NCBI RefSeq assembly: GCF_001194135.2
Contig: NC_069006.1
Coordinates: forward strand, 18,975,997 to 19,039,996
DNA from: Octopus bimaculoides
Taxonomy: Eukaryota
Direction of reading: 5' to 3'
DNA: 64,000 nucleotides
The position numbers were made by a program, and so were the translations under genes. Below, one piece after another: positions 454-29,796 of the stretch. Each line of letters begins with the position of its first letter. Within the stretch, counting starts at the first letter, position 1. The notes below the pieces were generated by a model. The model searched no databases. It was not told the DNA's origin and saw only the letters and a list, made by a program, of their open reading frames with translations.

Positions 454-932
454 AGAAGATGAAATTGATGCTGTACCATTAAACAATTCTGAAACTAATA
501 CAGAGCCTGTGTGCATTGAAACATCCATCAGTAACTCTGATTCATTACCCAGTCTTAGTGAAACTCCAGAAACTAAAGCAGTGCCCATAATTAATGAAAA
601 TGACAAAAATGATGATGATTCAATACCCAAGCCTACAAAAGAAGGCAACAATAAAAGAAGAGCAATACCCAAATCTAATGAAGATAGCGGCAATAAAACT
701 GATGCGGTACCTCAACGTTGTAATTATCTTAGCAAGAATACTCCTGCTACGTTCATTCCTGAAGGAACTCGTAGCTATAATATGCAAGCGGCACTCCTTC
801 CCAAAAAGGATCCCAGAAAAGAATTTAACCCAAGATGCCATAAAGATGATCCATTTCACAACCAGCCAGACTCTTCTTATAATGATCATCATTCAGACGG
901 AGAAAAAATTTTAAGCATGTTTTCACAATGCT
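454..932 (+). CDS. Exon A of copy 1: acidic/disordered region with D|AVP motifs
   Basis: Acceptor ttttcattccAG (451-453) and donor CT|GTAAGG (933); lies within ORF 401..964. Confidence 0.75.
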
Positions 933-3900
933 GTAAGGCTCCATTCTTTTTTATATTTCCTTAGATAAATTCACCATCATTACTTTGCATTGCTTCCCTG
1001 TCATAATTTCTTAATTATCATTACTTATTATGTTGTCATCATTAATTTTCCATCGTTTCTTTATCATCATTACTCTCTCATTATTATTTACAAATATTCT
1101 TTGTAATCATTACTCCATCATCATTACTTCTCCATCAGTCTTTGTCAACCATTACTTTGTCATCATTGCTATTTTTACTTTGTTACCAATACTTTGTCAC
1201 TATTATTTTGTTATCCTTACTGTTTCATCCTGAATTACCTATCATTACTTCTACATCATCGCTTTGTTTTTACTTTGTCATAATCCATCATCATCTGATT
1301 TGGAAACTTACTTGGACCAACACAACTCTCCCATGCCAAGTATCCTGAACAAGCCATATGGCATGAACATCTAGCCTGGGTTTTAATCACCTTGGTCTTT
1401 CATGAGCTAAAATATCTCACTTGCACTTGCCACAGCTACAGATGAAAGCAGTGTTTCGCTAACTGAACAGGACAATACTGATTGCTGACACTTGTTGTTT
1501 GTTCATTCGCTCAGCATTTAGTGGTATTTGTCTCTGATTCAATAAATTTATTTGCCAAAATAATTCACATTCACCATGCTGCATCCCATAATTTTTATGT
1601 ACCTGGTCTCAGGTAGTTTCATGCTACTTAGCCTTTATCTGGGACTCTGACAGGTGCTACTACTCAGGCCAAAGTAGACCTGGGAACAACAGTGACTAAC
1701 AGAGGTGGTTCCACATTCCTCAAAACCCTGGAGCTCCTGAACTATTGGATGAGGTTTAACTCTTTAGCCTTTCATATCTAATAGTGATGTTTTCTTCTGT
1801 TACAGGCACAAGTAGGTTTTCCACAGGTTGGTAAATGCATTTGGTTTTCCACAGGTTGGTAAATGCATTTGGTTTTCCTAATGTTAATCTTTAAGCTGAA
1901 TTTTTGTGCAGCTCTAGCAAAATTACCTATCAGGTTCTGCATATCTTCAGCACTGTAGGCAACTAGTGCACTATCATCAGCATCTTTTGCAATAGGGCCT
2001 TCGAAGTGTGTGTCTTTGCTTTATACTGTGCAGCCTTGAACATATCAACATCATGCCACATCTAGGTGTAAGCCCCACTCCAACTTTCTTAAAGGCAACT
2101 TCCAACACTGCTGTGAGATAGAGGGAGAATAGTGCTGGAGCAAGTATGCACCCCTGTCGAACTTCATTTATCACTGCAACCTAACTTGAGGTATTACTAT
2201 TTTGTACTATAAAAGCTTGCATTCCTTCGTGTAGGGCTGATACTGTGTCAAAAGCCATTGTGACATCTACGTAAACTACATACATAGGCATGTTCCACTC
2301 AATGTATTTTTCCTGAATATTGCATAGACAGAAGATTATATCCGCAGTGCTTCTGCAATGGAAGCCACACTCAGTCTCAGGTAAGACAGATATACTCATT
2401 TAGTCTGTTTAATAGAATATGAGCCAAGATCTTCCCAGCTATTGATAGAAGAGATATACCTCAATAGTTTCCAGAGTCCACTCTACAACCTGTTTTGAAG
2501 ACAAGAATGATGCCTGTGTCTTTCCAGTCTTGTGGAACTGTTTCCGTCTTCCAGATCTAGAGCACAGTGCTATACAGGCTTTTAATAAGCTCTACACCTC
2601 CATGCTTCCAGATTTCAGTGGGTATTCAACATCTATCAGGTGCTTTACTTTCTTTCATGTGTTTGATTGCACCATTGAATTCATTGTAAACAGGTTTGTC
2701 ATCTAATGATTGGATGATTAGCTGTTGTGTCACCTTCTTGAGGGTGTCATAGTCCATGACACCGGGGATATTAAGTAGGCTAACAAAGTGATTGGCAAAT
2801 CTATCAAGAATCTCCAGTTTTTCCTGGAATACTGCTTGGCCACCAAGACCAATGAGTTTTGTTGCACCTCTACTCTGTGGCTCGCATACCATTCAAAGTC
2901 CTGAATAAAATGTTTTCATATCATTTTATCAGCATAATGCTGTAGCTCTTCAGGGTATTTGTGAACTAAACCCCCATACTTTGTGTGTGTGTATATATAT
3001 ATATATATATAAAGAGTAAAGGGTAAAGACCCCTTCAGTCATGAATGATCATGGGATTGCACCTAGAAGGTTCCCCTCTGAGGCACAAGTCCGGGTAAGT
3101 TTTTTTTGTGGAAAACCAGCAGTCATCCATGCATACCAGCCTCCCCCCTCTCCACACCACCGATGTTGCCCAAGGGAAAGGCAAAGGCCAATACAGCTTG
3201 GCACCAGTGATGTCACAACTCATTTCTACAGCTGAGTGAACTGGAGCAAAGTGAAATAAAATGCCTTGCTCAAGAACACAACACACAGCTAGGTCCAGGA
3301 ATCGAACTCAGTACCTCATGATTGTGAGCTTGATGCTCTAACCACTGAGCTACACACACACACACATGCACACAAAACGGGCTTCTTTCAGTTTTTATCT
3401 ATCAAATCTACTGAAAAGGTTTTGGTTGACCTGGGGCTATGTTAGAAGAGTCTTGACCAAAGTACCTTGCACTGGGATTGAACTTGGGACTATGTGGTTG
3501 AGAAGCTAACTTCTTAATACACAGCCATGCCTATGTATGTATTATATTCTCAAAAATTTATGCTCTTGTGCTAAGTTAGAATTTTATATATTTATTCTAG
3601 CGAATATTACTATTGGAACAAGCAATCTATCCATTGGTAACTCTAATATCACAAATGTATTCAGCTCAGAACCGAGGAAGATAAAATCCGAGCATCATAG
3701 GGAGAAATTCATCAAATATTTCAGTAAGTAAATGCAGTTTCTATTTGTTGATTTCATATTAATCTTTTTATTTGTTTCAGTTGTTAGACTGTGACCATGC
3801 TGGGGCACTGCCTTGAGGGATTTTAGTCGAACTATTCGACCCCAGCACTCATTTCCTTTTTAAACCTGGTAGTTATTCTATCAGCTCTCTTTTGTTGAAC

Positions 3901-3973: not shown

Positions 3974-6081
3974 GTCAGTTGATGGTGGGGGACAAGAGAG
4001 AGATGTATGGAATTGGGAGGAGATGATAAGTGAGCATGGCACCAGCAAGACTTACATTATTTGGAAAATGCAATGGAAAAAATACAGTGAAATTGTCATG
4101 GAGAGTTGAATGTCTAACATTTAAGATAGAGTGTGAAATCTGATGGCGATTTGACTGTTATTTCTAAACAAAAACGTAAATATCAAACATTTCAATATAA
4201 AATCTTAAGAATCATGGAAATATTTTTGCAGAGTCTAATACAGTACTGACTGAGAAACACCTCAACAAAATAGCCAAATACTTAGGGAATAAATGGAAGT
4301 CTGTTGGTAAGTATAAAATATACATTACTTTAGATGTTTGGCTTCTATCATATCTTTATGTCTTGTCTTTTACTTGTTTTAGTCATTATATTGTTGCCAT
4401 GCTGGGGCAGCACCTTGAAGAATTTTTAGTTGGATGAATCCAGTACTTTTTTTTTTTTTTTTTTTAAGCCCGGTGTTTATTCTATCAGTCACTTTTGCTG
4501 AACTGCTAAGTGATAAAGATACAAACACACCAACACTGGTTGTCAAGCAGTGGTGGAAACAAACATGCACACACACACACACGTGTGACAGGCTTCTTTC
4601 AGTTTCCATCTACCAAATCCACTCACAAGGTTTTGGTTGGGCTGGTGCTATAGTAGAAGACACTTGATCAAAGTCCCATGCAGTGGGAATGAACCTGGAA
4701 TCATGCAGTTGGGAAGCAAATTTTCTTACCACCCAGCCATCCCTACGCCTATCTAACTACAAAATAATGTTTAGTGAGTGCTAAGATACTTAATGTGATG
4801 AAGAAAAAATTTCAGTTGAAGTTGTTTTTGCTAGGAGGAGAGGAAAAGAATCTTAACCCTTTTGCTACCATACTTTTGTTGGAACTCTTCTTTTGTTGTA
4901 ATTAATGTTGAAAATAATGAATTTATGAATATAACTGTTTTGAGATTAAGCTAGTGTTTTGAATATAAATTTGCATAAAAATTTGGGTTCAAGATTTTAA
5001 TTCAAATCACTTAAAAAACAAGAAATTTGTAGCATAGAACCAAAGTCAGTATTAAAAAGTTAGTGTTAACAAAATCTAATTCTAGACGAAGGGAGACAAC
5101 TTCGAAATTGTAACGAATCAAAGTTTGAAACAATACAATGAGGAGATAAAGACATTATTAGCTAGAGGCTTAGTGAGTACAGTGGCAGGTGTGGACATAT
5201 TTTGGATACAACCTTTATGCTAAGTCTCAATCACGTCATCATGATCTTCCCTTATTTGGTAATATAGATCTTCTCACTTTACCTACCTTAATTGAATGTG
5301 TGAACAAGATGTGGACTTTGCAAGCCACGGATTACTCGTCTCAGAGATCAGTAACATTTTGACTAAGAAGTGATAAAAAGGGACTCTTTGATCCTCCCCA
5401 CATGAGACAACCACTCTAGTGTCACCCAGTAAATTCCATGCTTCCCTATTCTCAATCTTTTGTCTTTTATCTTTTACTTGTTTCAGTCATTCGATTGCAG
5501 CCATGCTGGAGCACTGCCTTCAGAAATTTTAGTCAAACAGATTGACCCCCCCCCCCCAGTACTTATTTTTCCTTTTAAGCCTGGCACTTATTCTATGATT
5601 CTCTTTTGCTGAACTGCTAAGTTACAGGGATGTAAACACACCAACACCAGTTGTCAAGTAGTTTATGTGCTTGTCTACATCACTTATAATCATTTCAGTA
5701 TCACTTATTATTATCTGGATTCTTTCTATTTTCAGTCCCCAGTTTCTGCTTATCTCCATTTCTAGATCTTCATATCTGGATATTTTTTTTTCATTATCTA
5801 TTTTTGTCCTTCGGAATCGATACATCATTTGCTATTATTATTCTTCTTGTCAATGATATAATATTTTATTTTCAGGTCGGGATTTAGAAATTAAAGACGC
5901 TATGCTGGAAAACATAGAAGCAAACTACTCAAATAATGTTGAAGAACAAAGTTTTCAAATGTTAAACAAATGGTTACAGCTTTCCAAGTCGGAGACATGT
6001 ACAACTAGCAAATTAGCTGAAGCACTCTTTGAGGCTGAATGTTATGATTCAATTCAATATTTACCATTAGAGGAGGAGTGA
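454..6081 (+). CDS. Spliced Imd/RIPK1-like death-domain adaptor, copy 1 (5'-partial); join(454..932,3601..3723,4232..4306,5876..6081)
   Basis: All three introns are GT-AG and phase 1. The join reads open for ~293 aa to TGA at 6079-6081: EDEIDAVPL...KILSMFSQC-S-NITIGTSNLSIG...KYF-K-SNTVLTEKHLNKIAKYLGNKWKSV-G-RDLEIKDAMLENIEANYSNNVEEQSFQMLNKWLQL...KLAEALFEAECYDSIQYLPLEEE*. The C-terminus fits the death-domain pattern (IA..LG..W..GR.L.I....I....EQ.FQML.KW....T...L..AL). The Imd/RIPK1 label is inferred from architecture. Confidence 0.8.
1940..2900 (-). mobile_element. Degraded RTE-type LINE reverse-transcriptase fragment in the exon A-B intron
   Basis: Frameshifted RT motifs: EVRQGCILAPALFSLYL; LPETECGF..RSTADIIF....QEK..E......YVD...AFDTV; ILDRFANHF. 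Confidence 0.8.
3014..3350 (-). mobile_element. tRNA-derived SINE
   Basis: tRNA-like A/B-box head at the 3350 end; body shared with the copies at 18230-18395 and 44960-45215. Confidence 0.7.
3601..3723 (+). CDS. Exon B of copy 1: RHIM-like core (NITIGTSN)
   Basis: Acceptor tttattctAG (3599-3600), donor CA|GTAAGT (3724), 123 nt, phase 1-1. Skipping it would create TAG at the A/C junction, so it is needed for the frame. Confidence 0.75.
4232..4306 (+). CDS. Exon C of copy 1: N-terminal part of the death domain
   Basis: tttttgcAG|AGTCTAAT...GTCTGTTG|GTAAGT, 75 nt, phase 1-1; encodes SNTVLTEKHLNKIAKYLGNKWKSV. Confidence 0.85.
4368..4750 (-). mobile_element. Major tRNA-derived SINE, shared by both duplication copies
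   Basis: Same consensus as 59535-59945; the same insertion is present, truncated, at 15640-15850. Confidence 0.8.
5876..6081 (+). CDS. Exon D (terminal) of copy 1: remainder of the death domain
   Basis: ttttattttcAG|GTCGG; 67 codons to TGA; AATAAA downstream. Confidence 0.85.
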
Positions 6082-6444: not shown

Positions 6445-7330
6445 TTGTCCATATTGGTTACTACGTTAGTTTAATATCATAACTATATTTGGAGTAGTAC
6501 GGAGTGCATTCTGTGTTAACATAATAATACTGTGATAGGTTATTCTAGATAACCATATCCGAGTAATTATTTAGGTAATACTATTCTTACACACACGTCA
6601 TATTTTTGGTGATGAGGATATTTGAACCCATGCTGGACAGATTATTGTTTGAACATGGAAGATTTACTAGCTTTGGTAATTCAATTACAGAAACAGCAGT
6701 TGTTGGAATTGCAGAAGCAACAGCAGCTGTTAGTACAACGGCTTCAGAAGAAAACAGAAAATATATCAAAAGGATGTGTTATAATACTATTCCACAGCCA
6801 TACCAACAATCCACATATACAACTTTCAAACACATTTACCAATGTACAACCATATTGATAAATAAATTCCATAAGTAAATTACAACCACTCCTAAATACG
6901 CAACTAAACAGCAACAGCTCTATTAAGTCATACAGAATTATAATCCCAACCATCTTCCATAGTGTAATATAAAAGTAAAAGCTTAATGACCACATTATTT
7001 CAATCAATCAGTATATAGACAGGATGTGTAGTTCATTCTGACATGGTCACAAACTCCATCTGAGAGTTTGCATATAATCCAGAGGAGGGTACAACTTTTC
7101 CTGCTTACTTTAGAAGGTATGAAGAAATTTTTAAAGAAGAGTGCTCTGACTAGCAAGATGAAAAATCATACCCGACTTTTGTTGAGAAAGTTGGCATCAG
7201 CCAAGCATGAGAAATATTGAAATTACATATTACCAAAGAGACCAGGTTTTGAAGAAGATGTGAATATTTTGTCAAAGATTTTCGGCGGAAAACCTCTTTA
7301 TTTAATATGCATTGGTAATGCATGAATATT
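6445..7330 (+). mobile_element. Ty3/Gypsy remnant: putative LTR end, PBS and degenerate gag
   Basis: PBS-like TGGTGATGAGGAT at 6607 (complement of the tRNA-Ser(GCT) 3' end after CpG decay). gag-like MEDLLALVIQLQKQQLLELQKQQQ and EFAYNPEEGTTFPAYFRRYEEIF, with stops. Confidence 0.7.
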
Positions 7331-9265: not shown

Positions 9266-10169
9266 AAGATTAGCAGACAGCCAGCCATACAGTGGTACGA
9301 CATATAGTCTAAGTAGAAGAAAACCTTTTTAAGAGGAAAAATGAAGTTGGAAGAGTGGTGAAAAAGTTTTAGGTACTTGTGGTCGCTGTAACCGATGGTG
9401 TGCCAGTTCTTCTATGTGTGTATAAAGATATAATTAAAACAATATGTATACACCCACATAAATACACACACACATATACAACAAAGCCTAATGGTGTGAG
9501 TTTTCTAAAACTCCTTTAGGCACAAATGGTTTTCACAATATGCAAACCCAATTGTATGAATGGATCATAAGATTGAACTGCAAAGTAAAAATTTGAAATG
9601 GCGTTGACAATAATTTTTGTTTCCATGGATGCGCATAAACATGTACTCCAGCCTGGAAAACGCTATAACTGGTTAATGTGTATGACTGGGCATGCATAAC
9701 AGGACATACAGAGAAACTCCTTTTCTTTTAAATATATTACTAATGATCCAATACGACAGGCTTCTTTCAGTTTCTGTCTACCAAATCTGCTCACAAGGCT
9801 TTGGTTGGCCAAAGGCTATGGTAGAAGACACTTACCCAAGGTGCCATGCAGTGGGACTGTACCTGAAAAGTATGTGGTTGGCAAGCAAGCTTCTTACCAC
9901 ACAGTCACTCCAATCATTCACATAACCTATTTACATAATGTGAATGATAATATTTTGAAAACAAAAATGTTTAATATTTAATTTCATATGTAGGAGTAGC
10001 TGTGTGGTAAGAAACTCGCTTCCCAACCACATGGTTTTGGGTTCAGTCTCACTGCATGGCACCTTGGGCAAGTGTCTTCTACTATAGCCTCAGGCCGACC
10101 AAGTCTTTTTGAGTGCATTTGGTAGATGGAAACTGAAAAAAGCCCGTCGTATATGTGTGAAATTTATAC

Positions 10170-10654: not shown

Positions 10655-11707
10655 GAATAAAAGAAAATAAACAAAGAGAGAACTTGTAGAGTTTAGCAGT
10701 CCAACATGGTGAATATATGTATGTATTTGTGTGTCTGTGTCCCCACCACCATCGCTTGTCAACAGATGTTGGTGTGTTTACGTCCCTGTAAGTTAGCGGT
10801 TCGGCCCAAAAGACTGATAAAATAAGTACTAGGCTTACAAAGAATATATCTTGGGGTTGATTTGTTCGACCAAAGGCAATGCTCCAGCATGGCTGCAGTC
10901 AAAAGTATAACAGAATAATTGTGCATGCATGCATGGGAGAGAGAGAGAGAGAGAAACTGATAAACTAAATACAATTTTGTAATTGAAATACCAGTGACTT
11001 TAAAATTATGTCCCTTGCGTCTGTGACTGCCACTACCACCCACTCCCACTTCATCTTGCTGTTTCACTTTCTTTTCCTCACCTTCGTGGGCAGCCACATA
11101 TCGTGTTTCTTGTGCTCTAACTTCTTGTTGAACATCATTCATAGAAAATAGTAGCGACCACCATAAAGAAATACAAAGGTTAGTTAACTTTTCAAATATG
11201 TTTTGGTTTTAAATAACCTCATTCTTTTTGTTAGTTTTTATTTTATGCTTGTTAGATCTCTATCAAATCCTGAAACTTTCTTTAACTTAGAATAAACTAT
11301 CTTAATACTGTGCTGCCAACCAGGAAGTACCTGCACTACATAAAACCACTTATAACTTTGTGTTTGTTTGGAATTTTCAGAAAATGTTTGTGAATCTGTG
11401 TTCTATACACATGAATTCATATGTGTTCTATACACAGGAATTCATATGATTATGAAAACTAAAATATTTGGTGTGCGTTTAAGGCAATATAACTTTATTT
11501 TAGCACAGCTCACAAATACCTCATGCCTTCCTTGCACTGATATTTATTGATATTTTTCAACGTTTTTCTCCCCATAAACTCATTTAATGGAATGATGATG
11601 CACTCAAGGGCAGTCAATTGCTGGGATTTATTAATAAGGAAAAATTTGAAAATTAGGGGTAGAGTTTAAAAAATTAAGAAAAGAAATGTTTTTTTCATAA
11701 TCATATG

Positions 11708-12085
11708 TGGAGGCATGGCTGTGTGGTGAGAAGCCTACTTCCCAATCACATGGTTCTGGGTTCAGTCCCATTTCATGGCATCTCAGCCAAGTGTTTTCTA
11801 CTATATTCGCAGGCCAACCAAAAACTCGAGAGTGAATTTGGTAGATGAAAACTGAAAGAAGCCCACATATATATGGCTATTTATATATGTATATAGCCAT
11901 AAGTGTGTGTCTTTGTGTCTATGTTTGTCCACACATCATCACTTGACAACGGGTGTTGGTGTGATTATGTCCCTGTAACTTTGCAGTCCAGCAAAAGTGA
12001 CTGATAGAATAAATGCCAGGTTTAAAAATAAGCCCTGGAATTGATTTGTTTGATTAAAACCCCTTCAAGGTGATGCTCTAGTATG
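11708..12085 (+). mobile_element. Full-length major SINE
   Basis: Head tggaggcatggctgtgtggt followed by the family body. Confidence 0.75.
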
Positions 12086-12465: not shown

Positions 12466-13137
12466 GAAGGTTTGAAAATGCACTTATTTTTTAAAAATAT
12501 TTATTTACTTAACCGGTTTCACTTTTTTAGAAAAAGATTATCAAAAGTCTTTTGAGAATAATAAAAAATGTTAAAAAACAGTCTGAGTATTAAAATGCAT
12601 ATATACATTCTTTGATGATAAAATATATTTAAAGTATAAAGCTTTGTATGAACTTTGTAGTGTTACATACTGATTGTCACACATTCTCTGATATATACTG
12701 CGTATGAGTATATATGTATGTATGTATGTATGTATATGTCAGAAAAAATATATTCAAGTAGAACAATTCAATCTTTTTGAGGAGTCCAAAAGGAGAGAAA
12801 AATAATATGAAAATGAAGAAAGTTTGCCAATGTGAGGACTAAAAGTATTTTGGATTACAAGACAGTGATTGAAACCTTTGGCATTATGCTGTGCTTGAGA
12901 AGAAGACCCATCAAGCTAAGTGAAACTATAGTCTCAATATATACGACAGGCTTCTTTAAGTTTCCATCTATCAAATCCACTCAGTTTGGTTTGCCTCAGG
13001 ATTTATTAGAAGACACTTGGTCCATGATGTCACTTTGCGAAGCAAACTTCTTAACACACAGCAATGCCTATGTATGTATTATATTCTCAAAAATGTATGA
13101 TCTTGATGCTATGTTAGAAATTTTATATTCATTTCAG

Positions 13138-13239
13138 CAAATATTAGTATTGGAACGAATGTTGTAGTCATGGGTGACTCTAGCATTGCAGAAAAGCCAA
13201 AATGTGAGAGTGATAACGATCAATTCAGCTGCTATCTCA
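13138..13239 (+). CDS. Exon B' of copy 2 (RHIM-like ISIG)
   Basis: catttcAG|CAAAT...CTCA|GTAAGT, 102 nt, phase 1-1. Confidence 0.7.
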
Positions 13240-13758
13240 GTAAGTAAAAGTAGTTTCTATTTGTTTACTCTTTTTACTCTTTTACTTGTTTCAGTCATTT
13301 GACTGCAGCCATGCTGGAGCACCGCCTTTAGTCGAACAAATTGACCCCAGGACTTATTTTTTGTAAGCCTAGTACTTATTCTATTGGTCTCTTTTGCCGA
13401 ACTGCAAAGTTATGGGGACGTAAACACACCAGCATCGGTTGTCAAGCGATGTTGGGGGGACAAACACAGACACACAAACACACACACATATATATATATA
13501 TATATACATATATACGACGGGCTTCTTTCAGTTTCCGTCTACCAAATCCACTCACAAGGCTTTGGTCGGCCCGAGGCTATAGGAGAAAACACTTGCCCAA
13601 GGTGCCATGCATGTGGTTGGTAAGCAAGCTACTTACCACACAGCCACTCCAACCTTTTACTTGTATCAGTCATTAGAAGGAGGCCATGCATATATATATG
13701 TATGCACATATATATATATGTGTCTGTACATATATATATGTATGCACATATGTATATG

Positions 13759-13808
<50 letters not shown>

Positions 13809-16594
13809 TCTATAAATATATACATTGGGTTATCCCTGTAAACAATGCATTTTTTTATACTTCTTTTATTTTCCAAAATTAAGATAAACAAAGTTCTTTT
13901 CTAATCTAAAATATACTCTCCTTCGTTTTCTACAATGCTCTTCTGTCTATCTGGTAGACTTGCAAGGCCCCTCTTCCAAAATTCTCTTGTCCGTGACGAA
14001 AAATACTCCTCCAGTACTGTTCTGACCTCGTCTACAGAATTCATATTTTTTCCATCCAAATGATTTTGAAGACTGCGGAATAAATGATAATCCGATGGGA
14101 CAATGTCCAGCGAATATGGTGGGTGGGGCAAAAAAGGTTCATTCATGAGATGTGACAGCAAAGAAGAGCACACATTCACTTGCAGCACGTGATTAGACTC
14201 GGAAAGTTTGTGAGCAACCTATTGACCCAATTTGCTTACTTTTCCGATGGCACACAGGTGTCAATGAATGGGTGAATGACCAAATCCAAGCTTTTCTGCT
14301 AGTTCCTCAACACTTACAATGGGATTTTGTTCCACTAGGGTTTGCAGGATGTCCTAATTGAGCGCTACAAATCTTCCAGGATGAGGCTCGTCTTCTAGTC
14401 TAATTTCCGTCTTGGAATTTCCGGAACCACTGTTGACACTGGCTTACAGTTATTGTCGAATCCCAATATACTACATTAATATTCCTCACACTTTCTGTTG
14501 CGTTGTTGCCTTTATTGAAATCATAAAGCAAAATAGCTTTGAAAAAATAACTGTTAAAATCAAACAGCACTCTTTAAAATTTGCAGTAAGAACAATCACA
14601 AGGTGAACTTACTACCTGCTTTTATAGTAAGTGAATACAGGTAGTTTATCCTGTTCCCCTGTGACTTTTAGTTCATGCAATTGATAAAAACTGCATTATT
14701 TATGAGATGACCCTTATAAATGAGTAACAGTAGAGAACTACAGGTGTCACTTCATGATGACCATTTCAAACAACTCGTTTAGTTAATTAACAAAAACATT
14801 ACATCATTGTAAAGAAACCGTTTTCATCAGATAAATTCATGAACTTCAAAATATAGCACATTCAATATGATTTGACATAGTTTACAATCTATACAACAAA
14901 AATATTTCTAGAAATAGCAGCAGAAACAATATAAATGTTTTTGCTCTGTGGATTGTAAACTATGTTAAATCATTTTGAATGTCCTTTATTTTGAAGTTCA
15001 TGAATTCGTCTGAGGAAAACTGTTTTTTTTCACAATGATGTAATGTCTTCATTAATCAATTAAAGGGTTCATTAGAAACAGTCATAATTGATTGACACCT
15101 GTACCTCTGCAGTTACTCGTTTACATTTTATTCACCTGTCTCGAAATCTGCTCTTCATAAATATTATGGACCATATATTTAATATAATGTACATGTCAAG
15201 AGTGGATTTCTTCATTCAGCTTGGTTTAATAGTCTACATACACTGCAAGAATATCATTTGGCTGGTATTTATGTAGCAAGTTTGATGTTTACATAATATT
15301 GTTGTGTGTGTGTGTGTGTGTGTAAGTTGCCAACTAAGGATTACAAGGATTTAAAAGATTTGGGGATGACAAAACACCCCATGTGACTAACACAGGGTTA
15401 AGATAGAGTGTGAAATTTGATGGCGATTTAATTGTTATTTCTAAACAAAAAAGTAAATATGAAACATTTCAATATAAAATCTTAAGAATCATGGAAATAT
15501 TTTTGCAGAGTCTAATACAGTACTGACTGAGAAACACCTCACCAAAATAGCCAAATACTTAGCGAAAAAATGGAAGTCTGTTGGTAAGTATAAAATATCC
15601 ATTACTTCAGATGTTTTGCTTCTATCATATCTTTGTTTTATCTTTGACTTGTTTCAGTCATTAGACTGTGGCCATGCTGGTGCACCACCTTGAAGAATTT
15701 TTAGTCAGATGAATTCAGTACTTTTTTTTTTTTTTTTTTGAAGCCAGGTGTTTATTCTATCAGTCACTTTTGCTGAACTGCTAAGTTACAGAGATGCGAA
15801 CACACCAACCCTGGTTGTCAAGCAGTGGTGGAAACAAACACACACATACACACGTGCACATAGGTTTGAAATAAGGTGGAAAAAGTAGTACTTGAATACC
15901 AAAGGTAGAAAAAAATGTTCTTTTATTGAAGCTGGAAAAACCTTCACAAGCTGTTACTCAGATTTTTATGTAACCTATCATCAGACAGTTGTGATACTGA
16001 ATTATCAAATATTTCTGATGAAACTCTGAGTAAGAGTTTGTGGAGGATTTTTTCCAGCTTCAAAAAATTAGTTCATCATTTCTTTGGTGACATCCCTCCA
16101 GGATCAGGTCATGAATTTTCATGATGCTTTCATTCGTTTGGGAGGTCGACGGTCGCCTTGCATGAGGTTGGTCTTCAAATGACTAGTGACCCTTCCTACA
16201 GCATGGAAACCACTCATAAACTTGTGCTTCGCTTATGGCAGCATCCTTGTAAGCTGCTTGAAGTTTGACAACTGTTTCAGCGACCATTTTTCCCTAGTAT
16301 AAATTTTTTCATTATGTATCCCTCGAAATCGATACATTATTTACTATTATTATTGTTGTTGTCAATGATATAATATTTTTATTTTCAGGTCGAAATTTAG
16401 GGATTGAAAATGCTGACATAGATATAATACAAAGTGACAACGTACTTAATACTGAAGAACAGAGTTTTCAAATGTTGAACAAATGGTTGAAGATGTCCAA
16501 GCCAGAGAAAGGTACAACTGGCAATTTAGCTAAAGCTCTCATTGATGCTGATTGTCATGGTGCGATTCCATATTTACCATTAGATGAAGAGTGA
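13138..16594 (+). CDS. Duplicated RHIM-like + death-domain module, copy 2; join(13138..13239,15509..15583,16389..16594)
   Basis: Paralogous to exons B, C and D, with GT-AG phase-1 introns. Open frame: xNISIGTNVVVMGDSSIAEKPKCESDNDQFSCYL-K-SNTVLTEKHLTKIAKYLAKKWKSV-G-RNLGIENADIDIIQSDNVLNTEEQSFQMLNKWLKMSKPEKGTTGNLAKALIDADCHGAIPYLPLDEE*. No upstream exon A equivalent was found. Confidence 0.7.
13268..13650 (-). mobile_element. Full-length young major SINE in the copy 2 B'-C' intron
   Basis: Near-consensus sequence with a (TACTCTTT)n tail on the + strand. Confidence 0.85.
13823..14716 (-). mobile_element. Internally deleted mariner element
   Basis: ORF 13901-14188 encodes the transposase C-terminus (HPPYSLDIVPSDYHLFRSL). 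Degenerate TIRs: gggttatccctgtaaacaatgc and the reverse complement gggtcatctcataaataatgc. Confidence 0.8.
14779..15063. repeat. Foldback element (~130-bp imperfect inverted arms, ~25-bp spacer)
   Basis: acattacatcattgt...ttcatgaacttcaaaata...catagtttacaatc is mirrored at 14933-15063. Confidence 0.75.
15509..15583 (+). CDS. Exon C' of copy 2 (death domain N-terminal part)
   Basis: 72/75 nt identical to exon C, with the same splice sites. Confidence 0.8.
15928..16061. repeat. Nested palindromic element with a collapsed hammerhead-like core
   Basis: GAAGCTGGAAAAA/TTTTTCCAGCTTC, TTACTCAGA/TCTGAGTAA and CATCAGA/TCTGATG nested pairs; CTGATGAAACTC at 16015. Confidence 0.55.
16389..16594 (+). CDS. 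Exon D' of copy 2 (death domain C-terminal part)
   Basis: attttcAG|GTCGA; 67 codons to TGA (16592-16594); no indels relative to exon D. Confidence 0.8.
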
Positions 16595-17879: not shown

Positions 17880-18228
17880 AAAAGAGAGTTGTGTCCCTTT
17901 GACCTCTTCCACATCTGGTGCACGTTTTTCTTTAAGGATATTTTTCATATAAAGGACAAAAAACAAGTTACAGGGAGTAGCATCGGGTGAATGGGGGTGG
18001 TGAAGGTAAGTGGAGTCATGCCATTTTTGGTCAAAAACTGTCTTACACTCCAGACGGTGCGCGCAGGCGCATTGTCGTGATAAAACCACCACTCTCCACT
18101 TCGCCACAGGTCATGCATTTTCGTCTTTGCCGCGTCTTGCAAATGCTTCAGAACTGCCAAGTGAAATGTCTGGTTAACAGTTTGGCCTGGAGGAATAAAT
18201 TCTGTGTGGGTAATTCCTTTTGTGAAGG
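17880..18228 (-). mobile_element. Mariner transposase fragment
   Basis: WWFYHDNAPART..SVRQFLTKN and HHPHSPDATPCNLFF, the catalytic-region motifs, frameshifted. Confidence 0.8.
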
Positions 18229-18399
18229 CGCATAGCTCAGTGGTTAGAGCGTCGAACTTACGATCGTGGGTTGTGAGTTTGAATCCCGAACCGGGCTGCG
18301 TGTTGAGTTCTTGAGCAAGACACTTTATTTCACGTTGCTCCAGTTTCACTCCGCTGTAGAAATGAGTTGCAATGTCACTGGTGCCAAGCTGTATAGACC

Positions 18400-20010
18400 C
18401 TCCTACCTCTCTTTCAGTAACCAAATCATCGTCTCTGCCTCAGGAGTCAAACAAGGCGATCCACTCGGGCCTGCTCTGTTCGCATTGGGCATTGATGGCA
18501 TCACTAAGATGGGGCTCAAGCTAGACCTTAATATCTGGTATCTTGACGATGCTTCTTTGGAGGGGGAGGGACATCTAGACAGGGTTCTTGCCATTGCAAA
18601 CAAAATGGTTAAGGAGCTTGGTCGTAGGGTCCCCAAGTAAATAGCGCTAAATGTGAGCTCTGGATCCTCAACCACCTGGCTTCTCAACATCAACAATCTA
18701 TAGACCTATTTGTAGAGCCTTTCCCTTCCATTGCAGTTCCTCCCTCATCGGTGTGGTGCTCCTTAGGAGCCCCAATTACTGACCTTGATTCTATATTTGC
18801 TTAAAGTCAGCTCCTCTGAGTAATTCCCATCTTGCCTCCATTGCTTCAACAACCTAATTTTTGAGAGGTTTGAATACTTGGTCAATGTCAGGTTCTCTCC
18901 AGCGTGCTATGATCAGGCTGCATTGTACAAGCAATTTGGGGGTCTTGGTCTTTGTAAGTTTACATCCCTCTCTCTCCCCTCCTTCTGTTCCTCTATTCAC
19001 GCCTGCTCCATCCTGGTGAGCAACATCTTCTCCTCTCCAACATGGACCAGTTCCAACAGGGAGTTCGATGAAGTTCTCCAACACAGTAGTGAATTGGGCT
19101 TGTCTGCTCCTGAGAAGGCGGAGGACTGTCGGAGTCAGAGAGCTTGGGACAATATAATTTCAAATGCCACCTTCAACTCATTCTTCATCCAGTTGGACCA
19201 GTTTCCAAGGTGCTGCTTACTATCTGCTTGCACCAAATACTCAGGTGACTGGTTTGATGCCATTCCTGTGGCTAACATCAGTGGCCCACTCAGCTTGGAC
19301 GAACTTTGTGTTTCTATTGCCCTCAGAGTGGGAGCTGATGTCTGCATGAGTTTCAGTTATTGTTGTGTCAAGCTCCTTGACTTCACAGGCCTCCATGGTT
19401 TTTCTACCCGCCTGAATGCCGATCACTTCAAGCATCATACGGAATTAAACCTTACACTCGAGAGGAGTTTGGCCTGGGAAAACATCCCCTCCATCATGGA
19501 ACCATCTGGGTTGTCCACATGTGATGGGAAAAGACCCGACAGCCTCACCCTGTACCCCTTGTTGAGAGGCAGATGCTTTGTCTGGGACATCACAGTTAGT
19601 GACTCCTTTGCTTCTTCTCACATCCTGGATGCTGTGGCCAGGGTGAGATCCACAGCTTCTGTGGCTGAGTGGAACAAAATCCTAAAGTACTACGATCTGT
19701 CAGCCAACTACATTTTCCATCTTGTGGCGCTTGAGATTTTTGGTGGGGTTGGACCACTGACTGCAAGATTCCTGTCTTTACTGGCAGATCTCCAAGCAGA
19801 GGTAACTGGTGAATCTTATAAGGGTGCTTGGTTGTTCCAGCGCATCAGCCTTCCCATCACCCGCAGCACCGCTACAAGTGTGGTGTGCCTCAATAGTCAT
19901 TAGAGAAGTTTTCCCAGCACCCCAAAATGTTCAACCTAAGGTGGTGAATTGTTTTTGTTTTTTGTTTTGTTGTTTTTCTTCTTCTCACTCTTATGTATAT
20001 ATTTAATAAA
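18400..20010 (+). mobile_element. 5'-truncated CRE-like (RLE-type) non-LTR retrotransposon
   Basis: RT motifs SGVKQGDPLGPALF and NIWYLDD. The C-terminus has a degenerate C/H region, KRPD, WDITVSD and E..KILKY, typical of restriction-like endonucleases. AATAAA near 20005. Confidence 0.8.
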
Positions 20011-25645: not shown

Positions 25646-27592
25646 TCAAGGGTAATAGCCTAATGATTTCTCAAAGTTCATGTTATCATGTCGATTGTAG
25701 TTTGACTGTATGTGCTGTCTGTCAATTTCAATATTTTGAAACATAGAAGCAATTTCTGCCTCTTTACTGCCAATGTTTAGATGTGGGTTACTAGCAGCAT
25801 ACTGCTTATAATTATGACTGTATTCTTGCCTTCGCATTGCATCTTCATTTGCTTGTGAACGTCTGTCTTGTTCAACAGACATATCTGGTTTGTATTGCCT
25901 GTCCCCTACAGCTGGGTTGTAATTTGGGTTCAACTGGTTAGGGTAGTTGTTTGTCTGGTATTGCCTGTAGATGTCATGCTGTGACATTGTAGGTATTTGA
26001 CTTTTGTAATAATCATTAGCTGTAGCCATTGACATAGGTCTTGGTTCACTAGCTGACAATGAAGTACGAAGATAATTTCTACTACCTTCATCAGACTTTG
26101 AATCAAAGGCGTAGACATTTGAATAACGGTTGTTAGCCGTTCGATTGTCATGACTGCTGTGTCTATATTGCACGTCTGCCTTATCCCAGTTGGTCCCATT
26201 GGAAGAAAGTTTGGCACTGTTATCATATTCCTGATGAGATGGTTTAGGTGAAATTGGTCTTTTAGGTAATTCAAATGCTGTTGGCAACACTTTTACTCCA
26301 GCTATTTTGTGGGGTGGTACTTTTGCGACGGGTTTGTTGCGTGCTGCTTCAAATGACTGACCAGTATCGTTTCTGTCAAACTGCTGCCGGCTTTCAAGGT
26401 TTGAGAGTGAATACATAGGCCCAGAATGGTTCAATGGCTGTGAAGTAAATGAATTTTGCTGATACTGTTGTGAGTGTGGCATTTTTGGAGAGTATGGCTC
26501 ACTGGCATTTGTTTTCTGTGCCATTGGGTGTAATTCACCTGCCTGTCTCTGTTGTTCATCATAATTTGGATATTGCCCATAGCCTCGGATATTTTCGCTC
26601 ATTGGACGACCATACTTTGAAGGAAACCTTTGGCGGTTTTCTTGATTATGAGGATAATTAGATTGGCCTTCTTGATTGGCAACAGGTCTTTCATAGTAAG
26701 AATGTCCTCTAGAGAGTTGCACATGTCTGTTTTGGTGGGGTGAACCAGGAAATGGTGGTTGCTGATTATAAGGCTGTGGTTGCCCGTATGGATGTTGGCT
26801 GCGGACATCAGGAAACCTGTCATTTCTATCTAAGGCCCAGTCATCATGCACTTGGTGTCGGAAGTATTCATCTCGCAGTTGGTAGCCTTCATTAGGATGA
26901 GATGGCGGGTATTGTCCAGATGCCATGGCATTACTACCAACAGCTTGATTTTCTGGCGATCTAGGAAGAGAGTGGTAGTTCATTTCATTTGTTCTGGGGT
27001 CTTTGGGGTCGGGATTTTGTGAAGCAGCACCAAAGTCACCAATGTATTCTTTTTGCATGGATTTTTGTTGCATGAAATTAAAACTCTCCACAATTTTAGT
27101 AGCATCTGTCGTTGACAAAGAAAGAAAAACATGGCAGTCCAAAGCTTTTAAACCTGCCTGGCGCCTTAATAAACAGACAACAATAGGCTGATGAGAGATT
27201 TTCAGCAGATAATTGTTTTTCTTTTCCAGAGTAGAAAAGAGTTTGTCTGGAGACCTAACAATACGTTTCTCATCAAGAGGCATAAATGCAAACTGGGTTT
27301 TCCGCGTGTTGTTCTTGTTTATTGTAAACTGAACTGCTTCCATGTAATTAATCATATTAAATTCATAATGAGTATTTTTTAAGTAGGTTCCACTACCAGA
27401 TCCATTTGAAGTTAATATGTCTAATCCTTCGTAGGTGATTTGCATGTAGACTTCAGCTGGGGATTTGGTGACTTTCTTGTGGAAGTTGAAGTAATGCTCT
27501 TTTAGAGGTTTCTGTATTGATCCCAGTCCGGTGGTTCCTTTCGACAAAGTGGAACAGCCCAGGTAATGTAGGGTGTAGGTTAGATCCGACAT
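25646..27592 (-). CDS. PTB/PID-like domain protein with a long Q/N/Y/P-rich low-complexity tail (648 aa, single coding exon)
   Basis: Uninterrupted 648-aa ORF. The N-terminus (LHYLGC...VVCLLRRQAGLKALDCHVF) resembles PTB-fold hallmarks (YLG; CHVF). The ATG context is ACAATG, 6 nt after a strong acceptor (ttttccAG, exon starting at 27598). Confidence 0.85.
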   Translation of the reverse strand: MSDLTYTLHYLGCSTLSKGTTGLGSIQKPLKEHYFNFHKKVTKSPAEVYMQITYEGLDILTSNGSGSGTYLKNTHYEFNMINYMEAVQFTINKNNTRKTQFAFMPLDEKRIVRSPDKLFSTLEKKNNYLLKISHQPIVVCLLRRQAGLKALDCHVFLSLSTTDATKIVESFNFMQQKSMQKEYIGDFGAASQNPDPKDPRTNEMNYHSLPRSPENQAVGSNAMASGQYPPSHPNEGYQLRDEYFRHQVHDDWALDRNDRFPDVRSQHPYGQPQPYNQQPPFPGSPHQNRHVQLSRGHSYYERPVANQEGQSNYPHNQENRQRFPSKYGRPMSENIRGYGQYPNYDEQQRQAGELHPMAQKTNASEPYSPKMPHSQQYQQNSFTSQPLNHSGPMYSLSNLESRQQFDRNDTGQSFEAARNKPVAKVPPHKIAGVKVLPTAFELPKRPISPKPSHQEYDNSAKLSSNGTNWDKADVQYRHSSHDNRTANNRYSNVYAFDSKSDEGSRNYLRTSLSASEPRPMSMATANDYYKSQIPTMSQHDIYRQYQTNNYPNQLNPNYNPAVGDRQYKPDMSVEQDRRSQANEDAMRRQEYSHNYKQYAASNPHLNIGSKEAEIASMFQNIEIDRQHIQSNYNRHDNMNFEKSLGYYP

Positions 27593-28321: not shown

Positions 28322-29397
28322 NNNNNNNNNNNNNNNNNNNNNNNNNNNNNNNNNNNNNNNNNNNNNNNNNNNNNNNNNNNNNNNNNNNNNNNNNNNNNNN
28401 NNNNNNNNNNNNNNNNNNNNNNNNNNNNNNNNNNNNNNNNNNNNNNNNNNNNNNNNNNNNNNNNNNNNNNNNNNNNNNNNNNNNNNNNNNNNNNNNNNNN
28501 NNNNNNNNNNNNNNNNNNNNNNNNNNNNNNNNNNNNNNNNNNNNNNNNNNNNNNNNNNNNNNNNNNNNNNNNNNNNNNNNNNNNNNNNNNNNNNNNNNNN
28601 NNNNNNNNNNNNNNNNNNNNNNNNNCCCTGAACATGCTGCCTTGTGCTGAAATTTGAAATCAATATCTATTAACCCTCTAGTATTCAGATTACTCTCTCA
28701 AATGTGATGCTTATTTATTTACATATTTTGAATTGCTCATGCATCGTCTTGTGCCTTTAAGATTTCAATGATATGATTGTATATTTTTAGAATGACATTG
28801 TAGGGTAGGTATGCAATGCCAGATCTGGCCATCTTGACCAAAAAAAAAAGGTCGAATATCAGTCAAGGCAGATATACCTTGGCACTAGTCAGTGACCCGG
28901 AGCAACATGAAATAAAGTGTTTTGCTCAAGAACACAACACACAGCCTGGTCAGAGAATTGAACTCACTACCTCTAGCCACAGAGCCCGATGCTCTAACCG
29001 TCGAGCCATGCATCTTCACTATTTTTTATCTTTTTTACTTCTGTTACATGTTTCACTCATTAGACTGCGGCCATACTGGGGCACCACCTTGAATATTTTG
29101 TCGAATGAATCAACCCCAGTACTTATGTTTTAAGCCTGGTACTTATTCTATAGGTCTCTTTTGCTGACCTACTAAGTTATGGGGACATAAAAATACTATC
29201 ACTGGTTATCAAGTGGTGATGGGCGGACAAACACAGATGCAAACACACACACACACACACACATACACATATATATATGTGGGAAGCACCTGCACCTCAT
29301 ACACAGCACCTCTTGTGCCTTATACTATATATAACAATATAATATTGAGCTCTCATATTAGGCAAATTACCAGTTGGTTTTGTATCAGAAGTTGAGA

Positions 29398-29796
29398 ATA
29401 GGCGCAGGAGTGGCTGTGTGGTAAGTAGCTTGCTTACCAACCACATGGTTCCGAGTTCAGTCACACTGCGTGACACCTTGGGCAAGTGTCTTCTCCTATA
29501 GCATTGGGCCAACCAAAGCCTTGTGAGTGGATTTTGGTAGACGGAAACTGAAAGAAGCCCATTGTATATATGTATATATATATGTTTGTGTGTCTGTGTT
29601 TGTCCCCTCAACATCGCTTGACAACTGATGCTGGTGTGTTTACATCCCCATAACTTAGCGGTTCGGCAAAAGAGACCGATAGAATAAGTACTAGGCCTCC
29701 AAAGAATAAGTCCTGGGGTCAATTTGGTTGACTAAAGGCGGTGTTCCAGCATGGCCACAGTCAAATAACTGAAACAAGTAAAAGAGTAAAAGAGTA
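29398..29796 (+). mobile_element. Full-length major SINE
   Basis: ggcgcaggagtggctgtgtggt head and AAAGAGT tail. Confidence 0.85.

What the first reader, a model, noticed from the sequence alone, without database searches (positions are those of the whole stretch)
458..715. Array of latent IAP-binding motifs behind caspase-like sites
Seen in exon A: DEID|AVPL (458-481), ETK-AVPI (578-589), RR-AIPK (662-673) and NKTD|AVPQ (692-715). Known: an N-terminal A-V/I-P-x peptide (Smac AVPI) binds BIR domains only after proteolysis, and Imd is activated by Dredd cleavage after Asp. Inference: two Asp-preceded sites could be caspase-activated IBMs and the two K/R-preceded ones could respond to other proteases. 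Four repeats of this motif in ~85 aa are unlikely to be accidental.
Basis: partly seen in the sequence, partly recalled or inferred. Interest (0 to 1): 0.72.

Follow-up and report, generated by a model that had tools for sequence, protein, structure and literature searches.

The report
Octopus Imd-like adaptor's repeated AVP motifs
The four A-V/I-P motifs are real and sit in the floppy front half of an octopus death-domain signalling adaptor resembling insect Imd, but they are mostly heads of a decayed 14-residue tandem repeat, and only the first (DEID|AVPL) looks like a good candidate for a caspase-exposed IAP-binding site.

Summary
Observation confirmed: window 458-715 (+) encodes DEID-AVPL, ETK-AVPI, RR-AIPK and NKTD-AVPQ, plus a missed DDD-SIPK at 620. 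Four A[VI]P are expected 0.06 times by shuffling. The exon (454-932) belongs to Octopus bimaculoides XP_014771875/XP_052833014. That protein has about 190 predicted-disordered residues, a RHIM-like exon and a C-terminal death domain closest to RIPK1's, with no kinase, so its architecture is Imd-like. The multiplicity is largely descent: heads at 578/620/662/704 lie exactly 42 nt apart, and lag-42 identity is 0.56 against 0.31 background. All five heads and their preceding residues are identical in O. sinensis and O. vulgaris, while the exon otherwise evolves near the intron rate (permutation P about 0.03-0.05, marginal). In the tandem paralogue only the [VIL]-P core survives, not Asp or Ala. 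KRR becomes KIR in O. sinensis. O. vulgaris has a 1-nt frameshift downstream of the array. Verdict: partly supported. DE[IT]D|AVPL, 14 residues from the N-terminus, is a credible Imd-type cleavage/IBM candidate, and NKTD|AVPQ is a weaker one. The K/R-preceded sites have no support. Nothing is shown biochemically. This would be a new member of a known kind, of moderate interest because Imd has been reported missing in molluscs.

The parts
454..932 (+). Exon A: 159 codons encoding the disordered N-terminal region. The exon enters on the third base of a codon and leaves after the first base of a codon.
   Evidence: AG at 452-453 and GTAAGG at 933-938. 100% match to residues 10-168 of P0004 and 8-166 of P0002. 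Same exon in O. sinensis at L002:39118-39594 with no indels.
458..481 (+). DEID|AVPL: the best candidate for a caspase site plus IAP-binding motif (Asp14/Ala15 of isoform X1).
   Evidence: It is DETD|AVPL in O. sinensis and O. vulgaris. It lies outside the 42-nt array.
530..553 (+). SNSD-SLPS: a looser head of the same type (S-L-P after Asp).
   Evidence: It is SNSD-TLPS in O. sinensis and SNSD-ALLS in the paralogue.
578..745 (+). Degenerate tandem repeat of four 42-nt (14-residue) units: AVPIINENDKNDDD, SIPKPTKEGNNKRR, AIPKSNEDSGNKTD, AVPQRCNYLSKNTP.
   Evidence: Lag-42 identity 0.556 against 0.31 background. Unit pairs are 45-64% identical in register. TRF finds nothing because the repeat is too decayed.
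578..589 (+). AVPI head preceded by ETK (no Asp).
   Evidence: Conserved in O. sinensis; this head is deleted in the paralogue P0006.
620..631 (+).
   Evidence: Conserved in O. sinensis; NNN-AVPK in P0006 and NNN-VVPK in P0007.
662..673 (+). AIPK head preceded by KRR.
   Evidence: KIR-AIPK in O. sinensis; KIR-EIPK in the paralogue.
692..715 (+). NKTD|AVPQ: the second Asp-Ala junction.
   Evidence: SKTD|AVPR in O. sinensis, KTD|AVPQ in O. vulgaris. TN-ALPP in the paralogue.
3601..3723 (+). Exon encoding SNITIGTSNLSIGNSNITNVFSSEPRKIKSEHHREKFIKYF, with RHIM-like tetrads ITIG and LSIG-NS-N.
   Evidence: Splice sites read. Matches P0004 residues 169-209. Pattern resemblance only: Pfam gave no RHIM hit and the PDB search found nothing.
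4232..4306 (+). Death-domain exon 1.
5876..6081 (+). Death-domain exon 2 with the stop codon at 6079-6081.
   Evidence: Pfam Death E = 3e-10. Best solved relative is the RIPK1 death domain, E = 9e-12. The gene end matches L001:2912.

Best explanation
Exon A encodes the intrinsically disordered N-terminal half of a roughly 300-residue, kinase-less RIPK1/Imd-like adaptor of Octopus bimaculoides. The order is disordered region, RHIM-like stretch, then C-terminal death domain. The A-[VI]-P tetrapeptides are the conserved heads ([A/S]-[V/I/L]-P) of an old, decayed 14-residue tandem repeat, plus one separate copy close to the N-terminus.

The most likely working part is that N-proximal copy. By inference from the Imd model, the death domain recruits FADD and a caspase-8/Dredd-type caspase. 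The caspase cuts after Asp14 of DE[I/T]D|AVPL. The new N-terminal Ala-Val-Pro-Leu then docks into a type II BIR groove of an IAP E3 ligase. That ligase ubiquitinates the adaptor and passes the signal on to TAK1/NF-kB.

The downstream Asp-preceded heads (NKTD|AVPQ, NDDD|SIPK) may be alternative or back-up sites. The Lys/Arg-preceded heads are most likely repeat relics.

Shown here: the motifs, the repeat, the gene model, the domain architecture, the predicted disorder, and conservation in two close relatives. Inferred: cleavage, BIR binding and every downstream step.
For: The gene model and architecture rest on (Death domain only, no kinase; RIPK1 death domain E = 9e-12 against TRADD and FADD at about 2e-4; residues 1-190 pLDDT < 50, death domain confident). 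DEID|A has Asp at P4, Glu at P3, an aliphatic residue at P2, Asp at P1 and a small P1' residue, and A-V-P-L fits A-[VTI]-[PA]-x. Both consensus patterns are from my own knowledge. The site's position, 14 residues from the N-terminus, parallels Imd LEKD30/A31 and TmIMD LTTD/A, whose D/A junction is conserved across insects (PMC6626034). In O. sinensis and O. vulgaris the P2 residue changes I to T, but the Asp and AVPL are kept. There are no nonsynonymous changes in the 20 head-plus-P1 codons, against about 3.8 expected from the rest of the exon; block permutation gives P = 0.026. The exon as a whole diverges as fast as its intron (8.6% against about 7% mismatches; dN 0.080). Head codons differ at third positions between units (GCT/GCA/GCG, GTA/GTG/ATA, CCA/CCC/CCT), so the amino acids have outlasted synonymous drift. 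Octopus genomes encode IAPs, and type II BIRs bind N-terminal IBMs (PMC8917759).
Against: There is no biochemical evidence. The only orthologues found are within the genus Octopus (dS about 0.13), so the conservation signal is marginal: P is 0.03-0.05 with P1 included and 0.06-0.11 for the heads alone. In the tandem paralogues P0006 and P0007 the aligned positions read K-TLP, D-ALL, N-AVP/VVP, R-EIP and N-ALP. Only [VIL]-P is kept, and no D-A junction survives. The gene evolves very fast: death-domain exon 2 shows 17 nonsynonymous against 2 synonymous changes. The O. vulgaris assembly carries a 1-nt deletion in exon A downstream of the array, so constraint on this gene may be relaxed. Orthology to arthropod Imd was not tested. 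The RHIM resemblance is at pattern level only.
Confidence: 0.4

Rival explanations
1. The [A/S]-[V/I/L]-P heads are an internal, uncleaved short linear docking motif, repeated for avidity, that binds some other partner of the adaptor. The preceding Asp and the resemblance to IBMs would then be incidental.
For: Across the paralogue alignment (about 40% identity in this region) the hydrophobic-Pro core survives in 4 of 5 aligned heads, while the first residue varies (A, S, T, V, E) and the preceding Asp is kept in only one of four Asp-preceded heads. The region is predicted disordered. Multivalent repeats of short motifs are common in signalling adaptors (my own knowledge).
Against: I could not match the motif to a known ligand. 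From memory I checked patterns for TRAF2/6, SH3, SIAH, USP7, CtBP and calcineurin LxVP, and none fits. In the gene-1 lineage Ala or Ser and the Asp residues are fully conserved in three species.
Confidence: 0.22
2. The array has no specific function. It is the remnant of a 42-nt tandem duplication in a fast-evolving, weakly constrained disordered linker, and the heads look conserved only because the compared species are close.
For: The 42-nt periodicity is shown. Exon A diverges at about the intron rate, with omega 0.59. The death-domain exon shows 17 nonsynonymous against 2 synonymous changes. O. vulgaris has a frameshift. The conservation P-values are only 0.03-0.1. The locus is structurally unstable: the RHIM exon is duplicated in O. 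sinensis, and the death-domain exon of this gene copy in O. vulgaris resembles the paralogue's.
Against: Repeat tails have decayed to about 50% nucleotide identity and TRF cannot detect them, yet every head keeps [AS]-[VI]-P with differing synonymous codons. There are no indels in 477 nt between O. bimaculoides and O. sinensis, against 5 in 769 nt of intron. The first site combines a near-optimal caspase motif with an IBM at the position where Imd carries its own.
Confidence: 0.3
3. One reading: all four A[VI]P motifs are latent IBMs, two unmasked by caspases and two (ETK|AVPI, KRR|AIPK) by other, basic-residue-directed proteases.
For: All four fit A-[VI]-P-x and are conserved in O. sinensis. 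AVPI is identical to the mature Smac N-terminus (my own knowledge).
Against: KRR is KIR in O. sinensis and O. vulgaris, so the dibasic context is not kept. Neither site fits furin (P4 Arg) or the MALT1 paracaspase preference (P2 Ser/Pro), both from my own knowledge, and proprotein convertases do not meet cytosolic proteins. In the paralogue the AVPI head is deleted and AIPK is EIPK. The multiplicity is explained by the tandem repeat.
Confidence: 0.05

Closest known systems
Arthropod Imd (Drosophila IMD, Tenebrio TmIMD)
   Same: Both are short, kinase-less adaptors (240-280 aa against about 300 aa here) with a C-terminal RIPK1-like death domain. Both have an unstructured N-terminal part with a caspase site whose Asp|Ala junction is followed by A-x-P-x close to the N-terminus: LEKD30|AAPV and LTTD|A against DEID14|AVPL. 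Both carry a RHIM-like stretch between the N-terminal part and the death domain (PMC6626034, PMC4262963).
   Different: Imd has one such site, whereas the octopus protein has up to four Asp-preceded [A/S]-hydrophobic-Pro heads inside a tandem repeat. Orthology was not tested and no direct sequence comparison with an arthropod Imd was run. The tandem paralogue lacks the D|A junction. Imd has been reported as not found in molluscs (PMC9835746).
Vertebrate RIPK1 (the name NCBI gives this gene)
   Same: It has the closest solved death domain (E = 9e-12). It also has a RHIM-type element upstream of the death domain, and it is a caspase-8 substrate in death-receptor complexes (my own knowledge).
   Different: The octopus protein has no kinase domain. 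Caspase-8 cleavage of RIPK1 after Asp324 does not expose an IBM; RIPK1 meets cIAPs through TRAF2 (my own knowledge).
Classical IBM proteins: Smac/DIABLO (AVPI), HtrA2 (AVPS), Hid/Grim/Reaper, caspase-9 (PEPD|ATPF)
   Same: They share the tetrapeptide consensus A-[VTI]-[PA]-x. In caspase-9 and Imd the motif is unmasked by cleavage after Asp (my own knowledge; PMC8917759 for type II BIR-IBM binding).
   Different: Those proteins carry a single IBM at a proven mature N-terminus. Here the motifs are internal in the primary product and no processing has been shown.

Membership tests
Imd-type adaptor | C-terminal death domain of the RIPK1/Imd type | tested here: met
   Pfam Death E = 3e-10. The best PDB relatives are RIPK1 death domains at E about 1e-11, against TRADD and FADD at about 2e-4. 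The AlphaFold2 model of the death domain is confident. No direct comparison with an arthropod Imd death domain was made.
Imd-type adaptor | Short adaptor without a kinase or other catalytic domain | tested here: met
   The products are 300-311 aa in two species, Death is the only Pfam family above threshold, and residues 1-190 are predicted disordered.
Imd-type adaptor | N-proximal caspase site with a conserved Asp|Ala junction followed by an IBM (A-x-P-x) | tested here: met
   The sequence pattern is present as DEID14|A15VPL and kept as DETD|AVPL in O. sinensis and O. vulgaris. It is not kept in the tandem paralogues P0006 and P0007.
Imd-type adaptor | Cleavage by a Dredd/caspase-8-type caspase and binding of the neo-N-terminus to IAP BIR2/3 | not testable with these tools
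   This needs biochemistry.
Imd-type adaptor | RHIM-like (cRHIM) amyloid motif | tested here: inconclusive
   ITIG and LSIG-NS-N fit hydrophobic-x-hydrophobic-G-x-x-N and are kept as INIG and FIGNAN in O. sinensis. Pfam gave no RHIM hit and there was no PDB hit.
Imd-type adaptor | Orthology with arthropod or nemertean Imd by phylogeny | not tested
RIPK1 | N-terminal Ser/Thr protein kinase domain | tested here: not met
   No kinase family appears in the Pfam scan of P0004. Three alternative first exons add only 7-20 residues.
RIPK1 | C-terminal death domain | tested here: met
IBM-bearing IAP ligands | Tetrapeptide A-[VTI]-[PA]-x | tested here: met
   AVPL, AVPI, AIPK and AVPQ are present.
IBM-bearing IAP ligands | The Ala is the free N-terminus of the mature protein | not testable with these tools
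   All copies are internal in the primary translation product. Two follow Asp, one follows Lys and one follows Arg.
Protein tandem repeat | Head-to-tail units of constant period with above-background identity | tested here: met
   The period is 42 nt, with lag-42 identity 0.556 and lag-84 identity 0.536 against 0.31 +/- 0.04. TRF was negative because of decay.

The most novel reading that the evidence does not exclude
Octopuses possess a true Imd-type adaptor, in a phylum where Imd has been reported missing. Its N-terminal region would be a multi-site, caspase-gated array of IAP-binding motifs: cuts at Asp14, Asp64 and Asp92 each expose an [A/S]-[V/I]-P N-terminus. This would give graded or redundant IAP recruitment. 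The tandem paralogue that lacks every D|A junction would act as a non-activatable decoy.
Probability: 0.12. Interest if true: 0.7.

Novelty: new member of a known kind. Interest (0 to 1): 0.45.

Why it matters
The Imd adaptor is the hinge of the arthropod antibacterial NF-kB pathway, and a 2023 survey states it had not been found in molluscs or brachiopods (PMC9835746). An octopus death-domain adaptor with the Imd hallmarks would suggest something broader. Those hallmarks are no kinase, a RIPK1-like death domain, a RHIM-like stretch, and an N-proximal Asp|Ala-x-Pro site. The caspase-cleavage/IAP-docking switch might then be older than arthropods, or it might have arisen twice. It would also give cephalopod immunology a concrete, testable signalling node. 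If only the repeat explanation holds, the finding is an ordinary low-complexity feature of a fast-evolving immune gene family.

Tried and rejected
1. The word-indexed protein search with exon A alone found nothing, not even the gene's own product. This was a false negative. The exhaustive search and a profile search then recovered the self protein and the Octopus relatives.
2. Tandem Repeats Finder found no array in 400-1000. The repeat showed up only in a lag-identity analysis.
3. Splicing exon A directly to the first death-domain exon would create TAG. That led me to the intermediate RHIM-like exon at 3601-3723.
4. A second copy of exon A for the neighbouring paralogue was sought in the window by tblastn and not found.
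5. The Pfam scan and PDB sequence search with the RHIM-like exon gave no hit.
6. The only non-Octopus hit to exon A, P0003, is a 1959-aa repetitive protein matched over 29 residues. I dismissed it as compositional.
7. Basic-residue proteases (furin or proprotein convertases, MALT1) for ETK|A and KRR|A were rejected, because the context is not conserved (KIR in O. sinensis) and does not fit their preferences as I know them.
8. Other linear-motif classes (TRAF2/6, SH3, SIAH, USP7, CtBP, LxVP) were checked by eye from memory, and none fits.
9. The literature searches that returned anything on cephalopods or lophotrochozoans found no description of this octopus gene or of its motifs.

Full report
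**1. What is in the sequence**

Translating window 458-715 on the + strand gives DEIDAVPLNNSETNTEPVCIETSISNSDSLPSLSETPETKAVPIINENDKNDDDSIPKPTKEGNNKRRAIPKSNEDSGNKTDAVPQ.

The open frame runs from 401 to 964. It is bounded by a good acceptor (ttcattccAG|A at 452-453/454) and a good donor (CT|GTAAGG at 932/933).

**2. The exon is real and belongs to an annotated gene**

The first word-indexed search with the exon found nothing. The exhaustive search then found a 300-aa protein that contains the exon at 100% identity (P0002). Cluster look-up names it XP_052833014 (isoform X2). Its partner is XP_014771875 (isoform X1, P0004, 302 aa). [quoted passage not shown] The window is chromosome CM046626.1 of GCA_001194135.2.

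The coding exons visible in the window are:
- exon A, 454-932;
- 3601-3723, encoding SNITIGTSNLSIGNSNITNVFSSEPRKIKSEHHREKFIKYF;
- 4232-4306 and 5876-6081, which together encode a death domain.

The 7-9 N-terminal residues come from alternative first exons upstream of the window.

**3. What kind of protein it is**

Pfam finds only a Death domain (E = 3e-10) and no kinase. Among solved structures the best matches are RIPK1 death domains (E about 1e-11). TRADD and FADD score far worse, at about 2e-4.

An AlphaFold2 model built on the eight-sequence alignment gives pLDDT below 50 for residues 1-190. It gives a confident helical bundle of six helices for residues 192-296.

The middle exon carries two tetrads, ITIG and LSIG followed by NSN. 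These fit the RHIM pattern hydrophobic-x-hydrophobic-G-x-x-N. However, Pfam gave no RHIM hit and the PDB sequence search returned nothing, so this is a resemblance, not a demonstrated RHIM. Divergent RHIM-like motifs in invertebrate death-fold proteins, including Drosophila IMD, are documented (PMC4262963).

The architecture is therefore that of a kinase-less RIPK1, which is how Imd is usually described.

**4. More than chance, but not independent**

Shuffling the exon 200,000 times gives a mean of 0.059 A[VI]P against 4 observed, and no shuffle reached 4. It gives a mean of 0.005 DA[VI]P against 2 observed (P = 5e-6).

With it, the heads at 578, 620, 662 and 704 are exactly 42 nt apart. The units read AVPIINENDKNDDD, SIPKPTKEGNNKRR, AIPKSNEDSGNKTD and AVPQRCNYLSKNTP, and unit pairs are up to 64% identical at the DNA level.

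In-frame self-identity of 578-745 is 0.556 at lag 42 and 0.536 at lag 84. At all other in-frame lags it is 0.31 +/- 0.043. No codon shuffle out of 20,000 reached the lag-42 value. Identity stays at 0.505 when the heads are masked. TRF misses the array because it is too decayed.

Two points still suggest the heads matter:
- The unit tails have decayed far more than the heads.
- The head codons differ at synonymous positions (GCT/GCA/GCG; GTA/GTG/ATA; CCA/CCC/CCT).

The first copy, DEID|AVPL at 458-481, lies outside the periodic array.

**5. Relatives**

A profile search recovered only Octopus proteins:
- P0005 from O. sinensis (311 aa, 79% identity), the orthologue;
- P0006 (O. vulgaris, 292 aa) and P0007 (O. 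sinensis, 205 aa), which belong to the lineage of the neighbouring tandem paralogue;
- the window's own second gene, P0001 (116 aa; exons at 13170-13239, about 15509-15585 and 16388-16594).

In O. sinensis every head and its preceding residue are identical: DETD|AVPL, ETK-AVPI, DDD-SIPK, KIR-AIPK and KTD|AVPR. The unannotated O. vulgaris copy reads the same, with AVPQ as its last head.

Exon A has no indels between O. bimaculoides and O. sinensis, with dN = 0.080, dS = 0.135 and omega = 0.59. Its nucleotide divergence is 8.6%. That is no lower than the adjacent intron, which has about 7% mismatches plus five indels in 769 nt. At the amino-acid level the exon therefore evolves close to neutrally while keeping its frame.

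Against that background, the 20 codons of heads plus P1 residues show no nonsynonymous change where about 3.8 are expected. Block permutation gives these P-values:
- 0.026 for heads plus P1 over the whole exon;
- 0.05 for heads plus P1 within the first 100 residues;
- 0.06-0.11 for the heads alone.

This is suggestive but marginal.

**6. The paralogue argues for caution**

At about 40% identity the alignment of P0006 to exon A is convincing. For example, VPKPTGEGNDKIREIPKSNE aligns with IPKPTKEGNNKRRAIPKSNE, and CNNFSKNT with CNYLSKNT. The heads there read K-TLP, D-ALL, (AVPI head deleted), N-AVP (VVP in P0007), R-EIP and N-ALP.

What is common to both gene lineages is hydrophobic-Pro. The Asp|Ala junction that defines a caspase-exposed IBM is not shared. 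There are two ways to read this:
- The paralogue has lost or never had the switch, and could act as a regulator or decoy.
- The conserved feature is an internal docking motif unrelated to cleavage.

Other signs of weak constraint are:
- 17 nonsynonymous against 2 synonymous differences in death-domain exon 2.
- A duplicated RHIM-like exon in O. sinensis.
- A paralogue-like death-domain exon in the O. vulgaris copy.
- A 1-nt deletion in a CCC run of O. vulgaris exon A, downstream of all heads. It is either a real frameshift or an assembly error.

**7. How it most likely works**

In Drosophila, Dredd cuts IMD at 27-LEKD|A-31. The new N-terminus is an IBM that binds DIAP2 BIR2/3. K63 ubiquitination then recruits TAB2/TAK1. 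The D|A junction is conserved across insect orders (LTTD|A, LETD|A, LKSD|A), and in Tenebrio it lies about 14 residues from the N-terminus (PMC6626034).

The octopus DE[I/T]D|AVPL has Asp at P4, Glu at P3, an aliphatic or Thr residue at P2, Asp at P1 and a small P1' residue. From my own knowledge that is a near-optimal caspase-3/-8-type site. It is followed by a textbook IBM, at residue 14/15 of a disordered tail attached to a RIPK1-like death domain.

Octopus genomes encode IAPs, and type II BIRs bind such N-termini (PMC8917759).

I therefore take an Imd-like switch at this first site as the single most likely mechanism (confidence about 0.4). NKTD|AVPQ and NDDD|SIPK are possible secondary sites, although their P4-P2 residues are poor for canonical caspases.

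The Lys/Arg-preceded heads have no plausible activating protease. The KRR context is not even kept in the sister lineage (KIR).

**8. Comparison with what is known, and novelty**

The protein works like Imd on paper, and it meets the sequence-level features I could test (see the membership table). Orthology with arthropod Imd, cleavage and BIR binding remain untested.

It fails the defining kinase feature of RIPK1, so the database name is misleading.

A 2023 survey states that the Imd adaptor had not been found in molluscs and reports the first spiralian imd in a nemertean (PMC9835746). The literature searches that returned anything on cephalopods or lophotrochozoans found no description of this octopus gene or its motifs.

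I rate it a probable new member of a known kind. It is moderately interesting (0.45) because everything beyond the sequence pattern is inference, and the comparative signal is thin.

Noticed in passing
window 3601-3723 (+); L002:42572-42691 and 43669-43788: The exon between exon A and the death domain encodes two RHIM-like tetrads (ITIG, LSIG-NS-N). These are conserved as INIG and FIGNAN in O. sinensis, where the exon is present twice about 1.1 kb apart. Pfam gave no RHIM hit and the PDB sequence search found nothing.
   Followed up: partly
window 13128-13239, 6655-6756, 7207-7251 (+): The annotated start Met of the neighbouring paralogue (P0001, 116 aa) lies inside a RHIM-like exon (FISANISIGTNVVVMGDSS...). 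ORFs at 6655-6756 and 7207-7251 match the N-termini of the O. vulgaris and O. sinensis paralogues. The O. bimaculoides gene-2 model is therefore probably truncated. No exon-A-like copy for it exists in the assembled window.
   Followed up: partly
window 5876-6078 (+) vs L002:52440-52637: Death-domain exon 2 differs from O. sinensis by 17 nonsynonymous and only 2 synonymous changes (omega about 2). This could reflect positive selection, relaxed constraint or gene conversion in this tandem family.
   Followed up: partly
L003:6460-6950 (O. vulgaris), equivalent to window ~757: A 1-nt deletion in a CCC run shifts the frame of exon A downstream of the motif array. The O. vulgaris annotation instead fuses exon A to an upstream death-domain gene (453-aa product). 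A further upstream paralogue has its death-domain exon at L003:550-628.
   Followed up: partly
window 25646-27592 (-): There is a single 648-codon ORF on the opposite strand, and a 653-residue gene product is called on the minus strand at the corresponding position in the GenBank assembly. It has no Pfam family at E <= 1, and its C-terminal two-thirds are rich in Gln, Asn, Pro and Tyr.
   Followed up: partly
window 591-911 (+), frame +2 of exon A: A 107-codon alternative-frame ORF overlaps exon A. This is the frame the O. vulgaris frameshift reads into. It is probably a by-product of the A-rich codon usage.
   Followed up: no
window 1781-2892 (-), 17948-18439 (-), 18248-19900 (+), 13904-14218 (-), 52699-53070 (-): These ORFs look like transposable-element debris. 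RVT_1 scores below threshold at 18248-18637 (E = 9e-4) and Transposase_1 at 17948-18439 (E = 2e-3). The other ORFs look like reverse-transcriptase or mariner fragments by eye but gave no Pfam hit. The first of these fragments lies in the intron between exon A and the RHIM-like exon.
   Followed up: partly
window e.g. 9686-9922, 11634-11876, 13345-13620, 29300-29731, 33978-34169, 59574-59879, 62143-62403: A SINE-like element recurs many times on both strands; in one frame it translates to ...LLSVSIYQIHSQGFGWP.... It is usually next to TG/CA or TATG microsatellites and assembly gaps. The window holds 4747 N.
   Followed up: no
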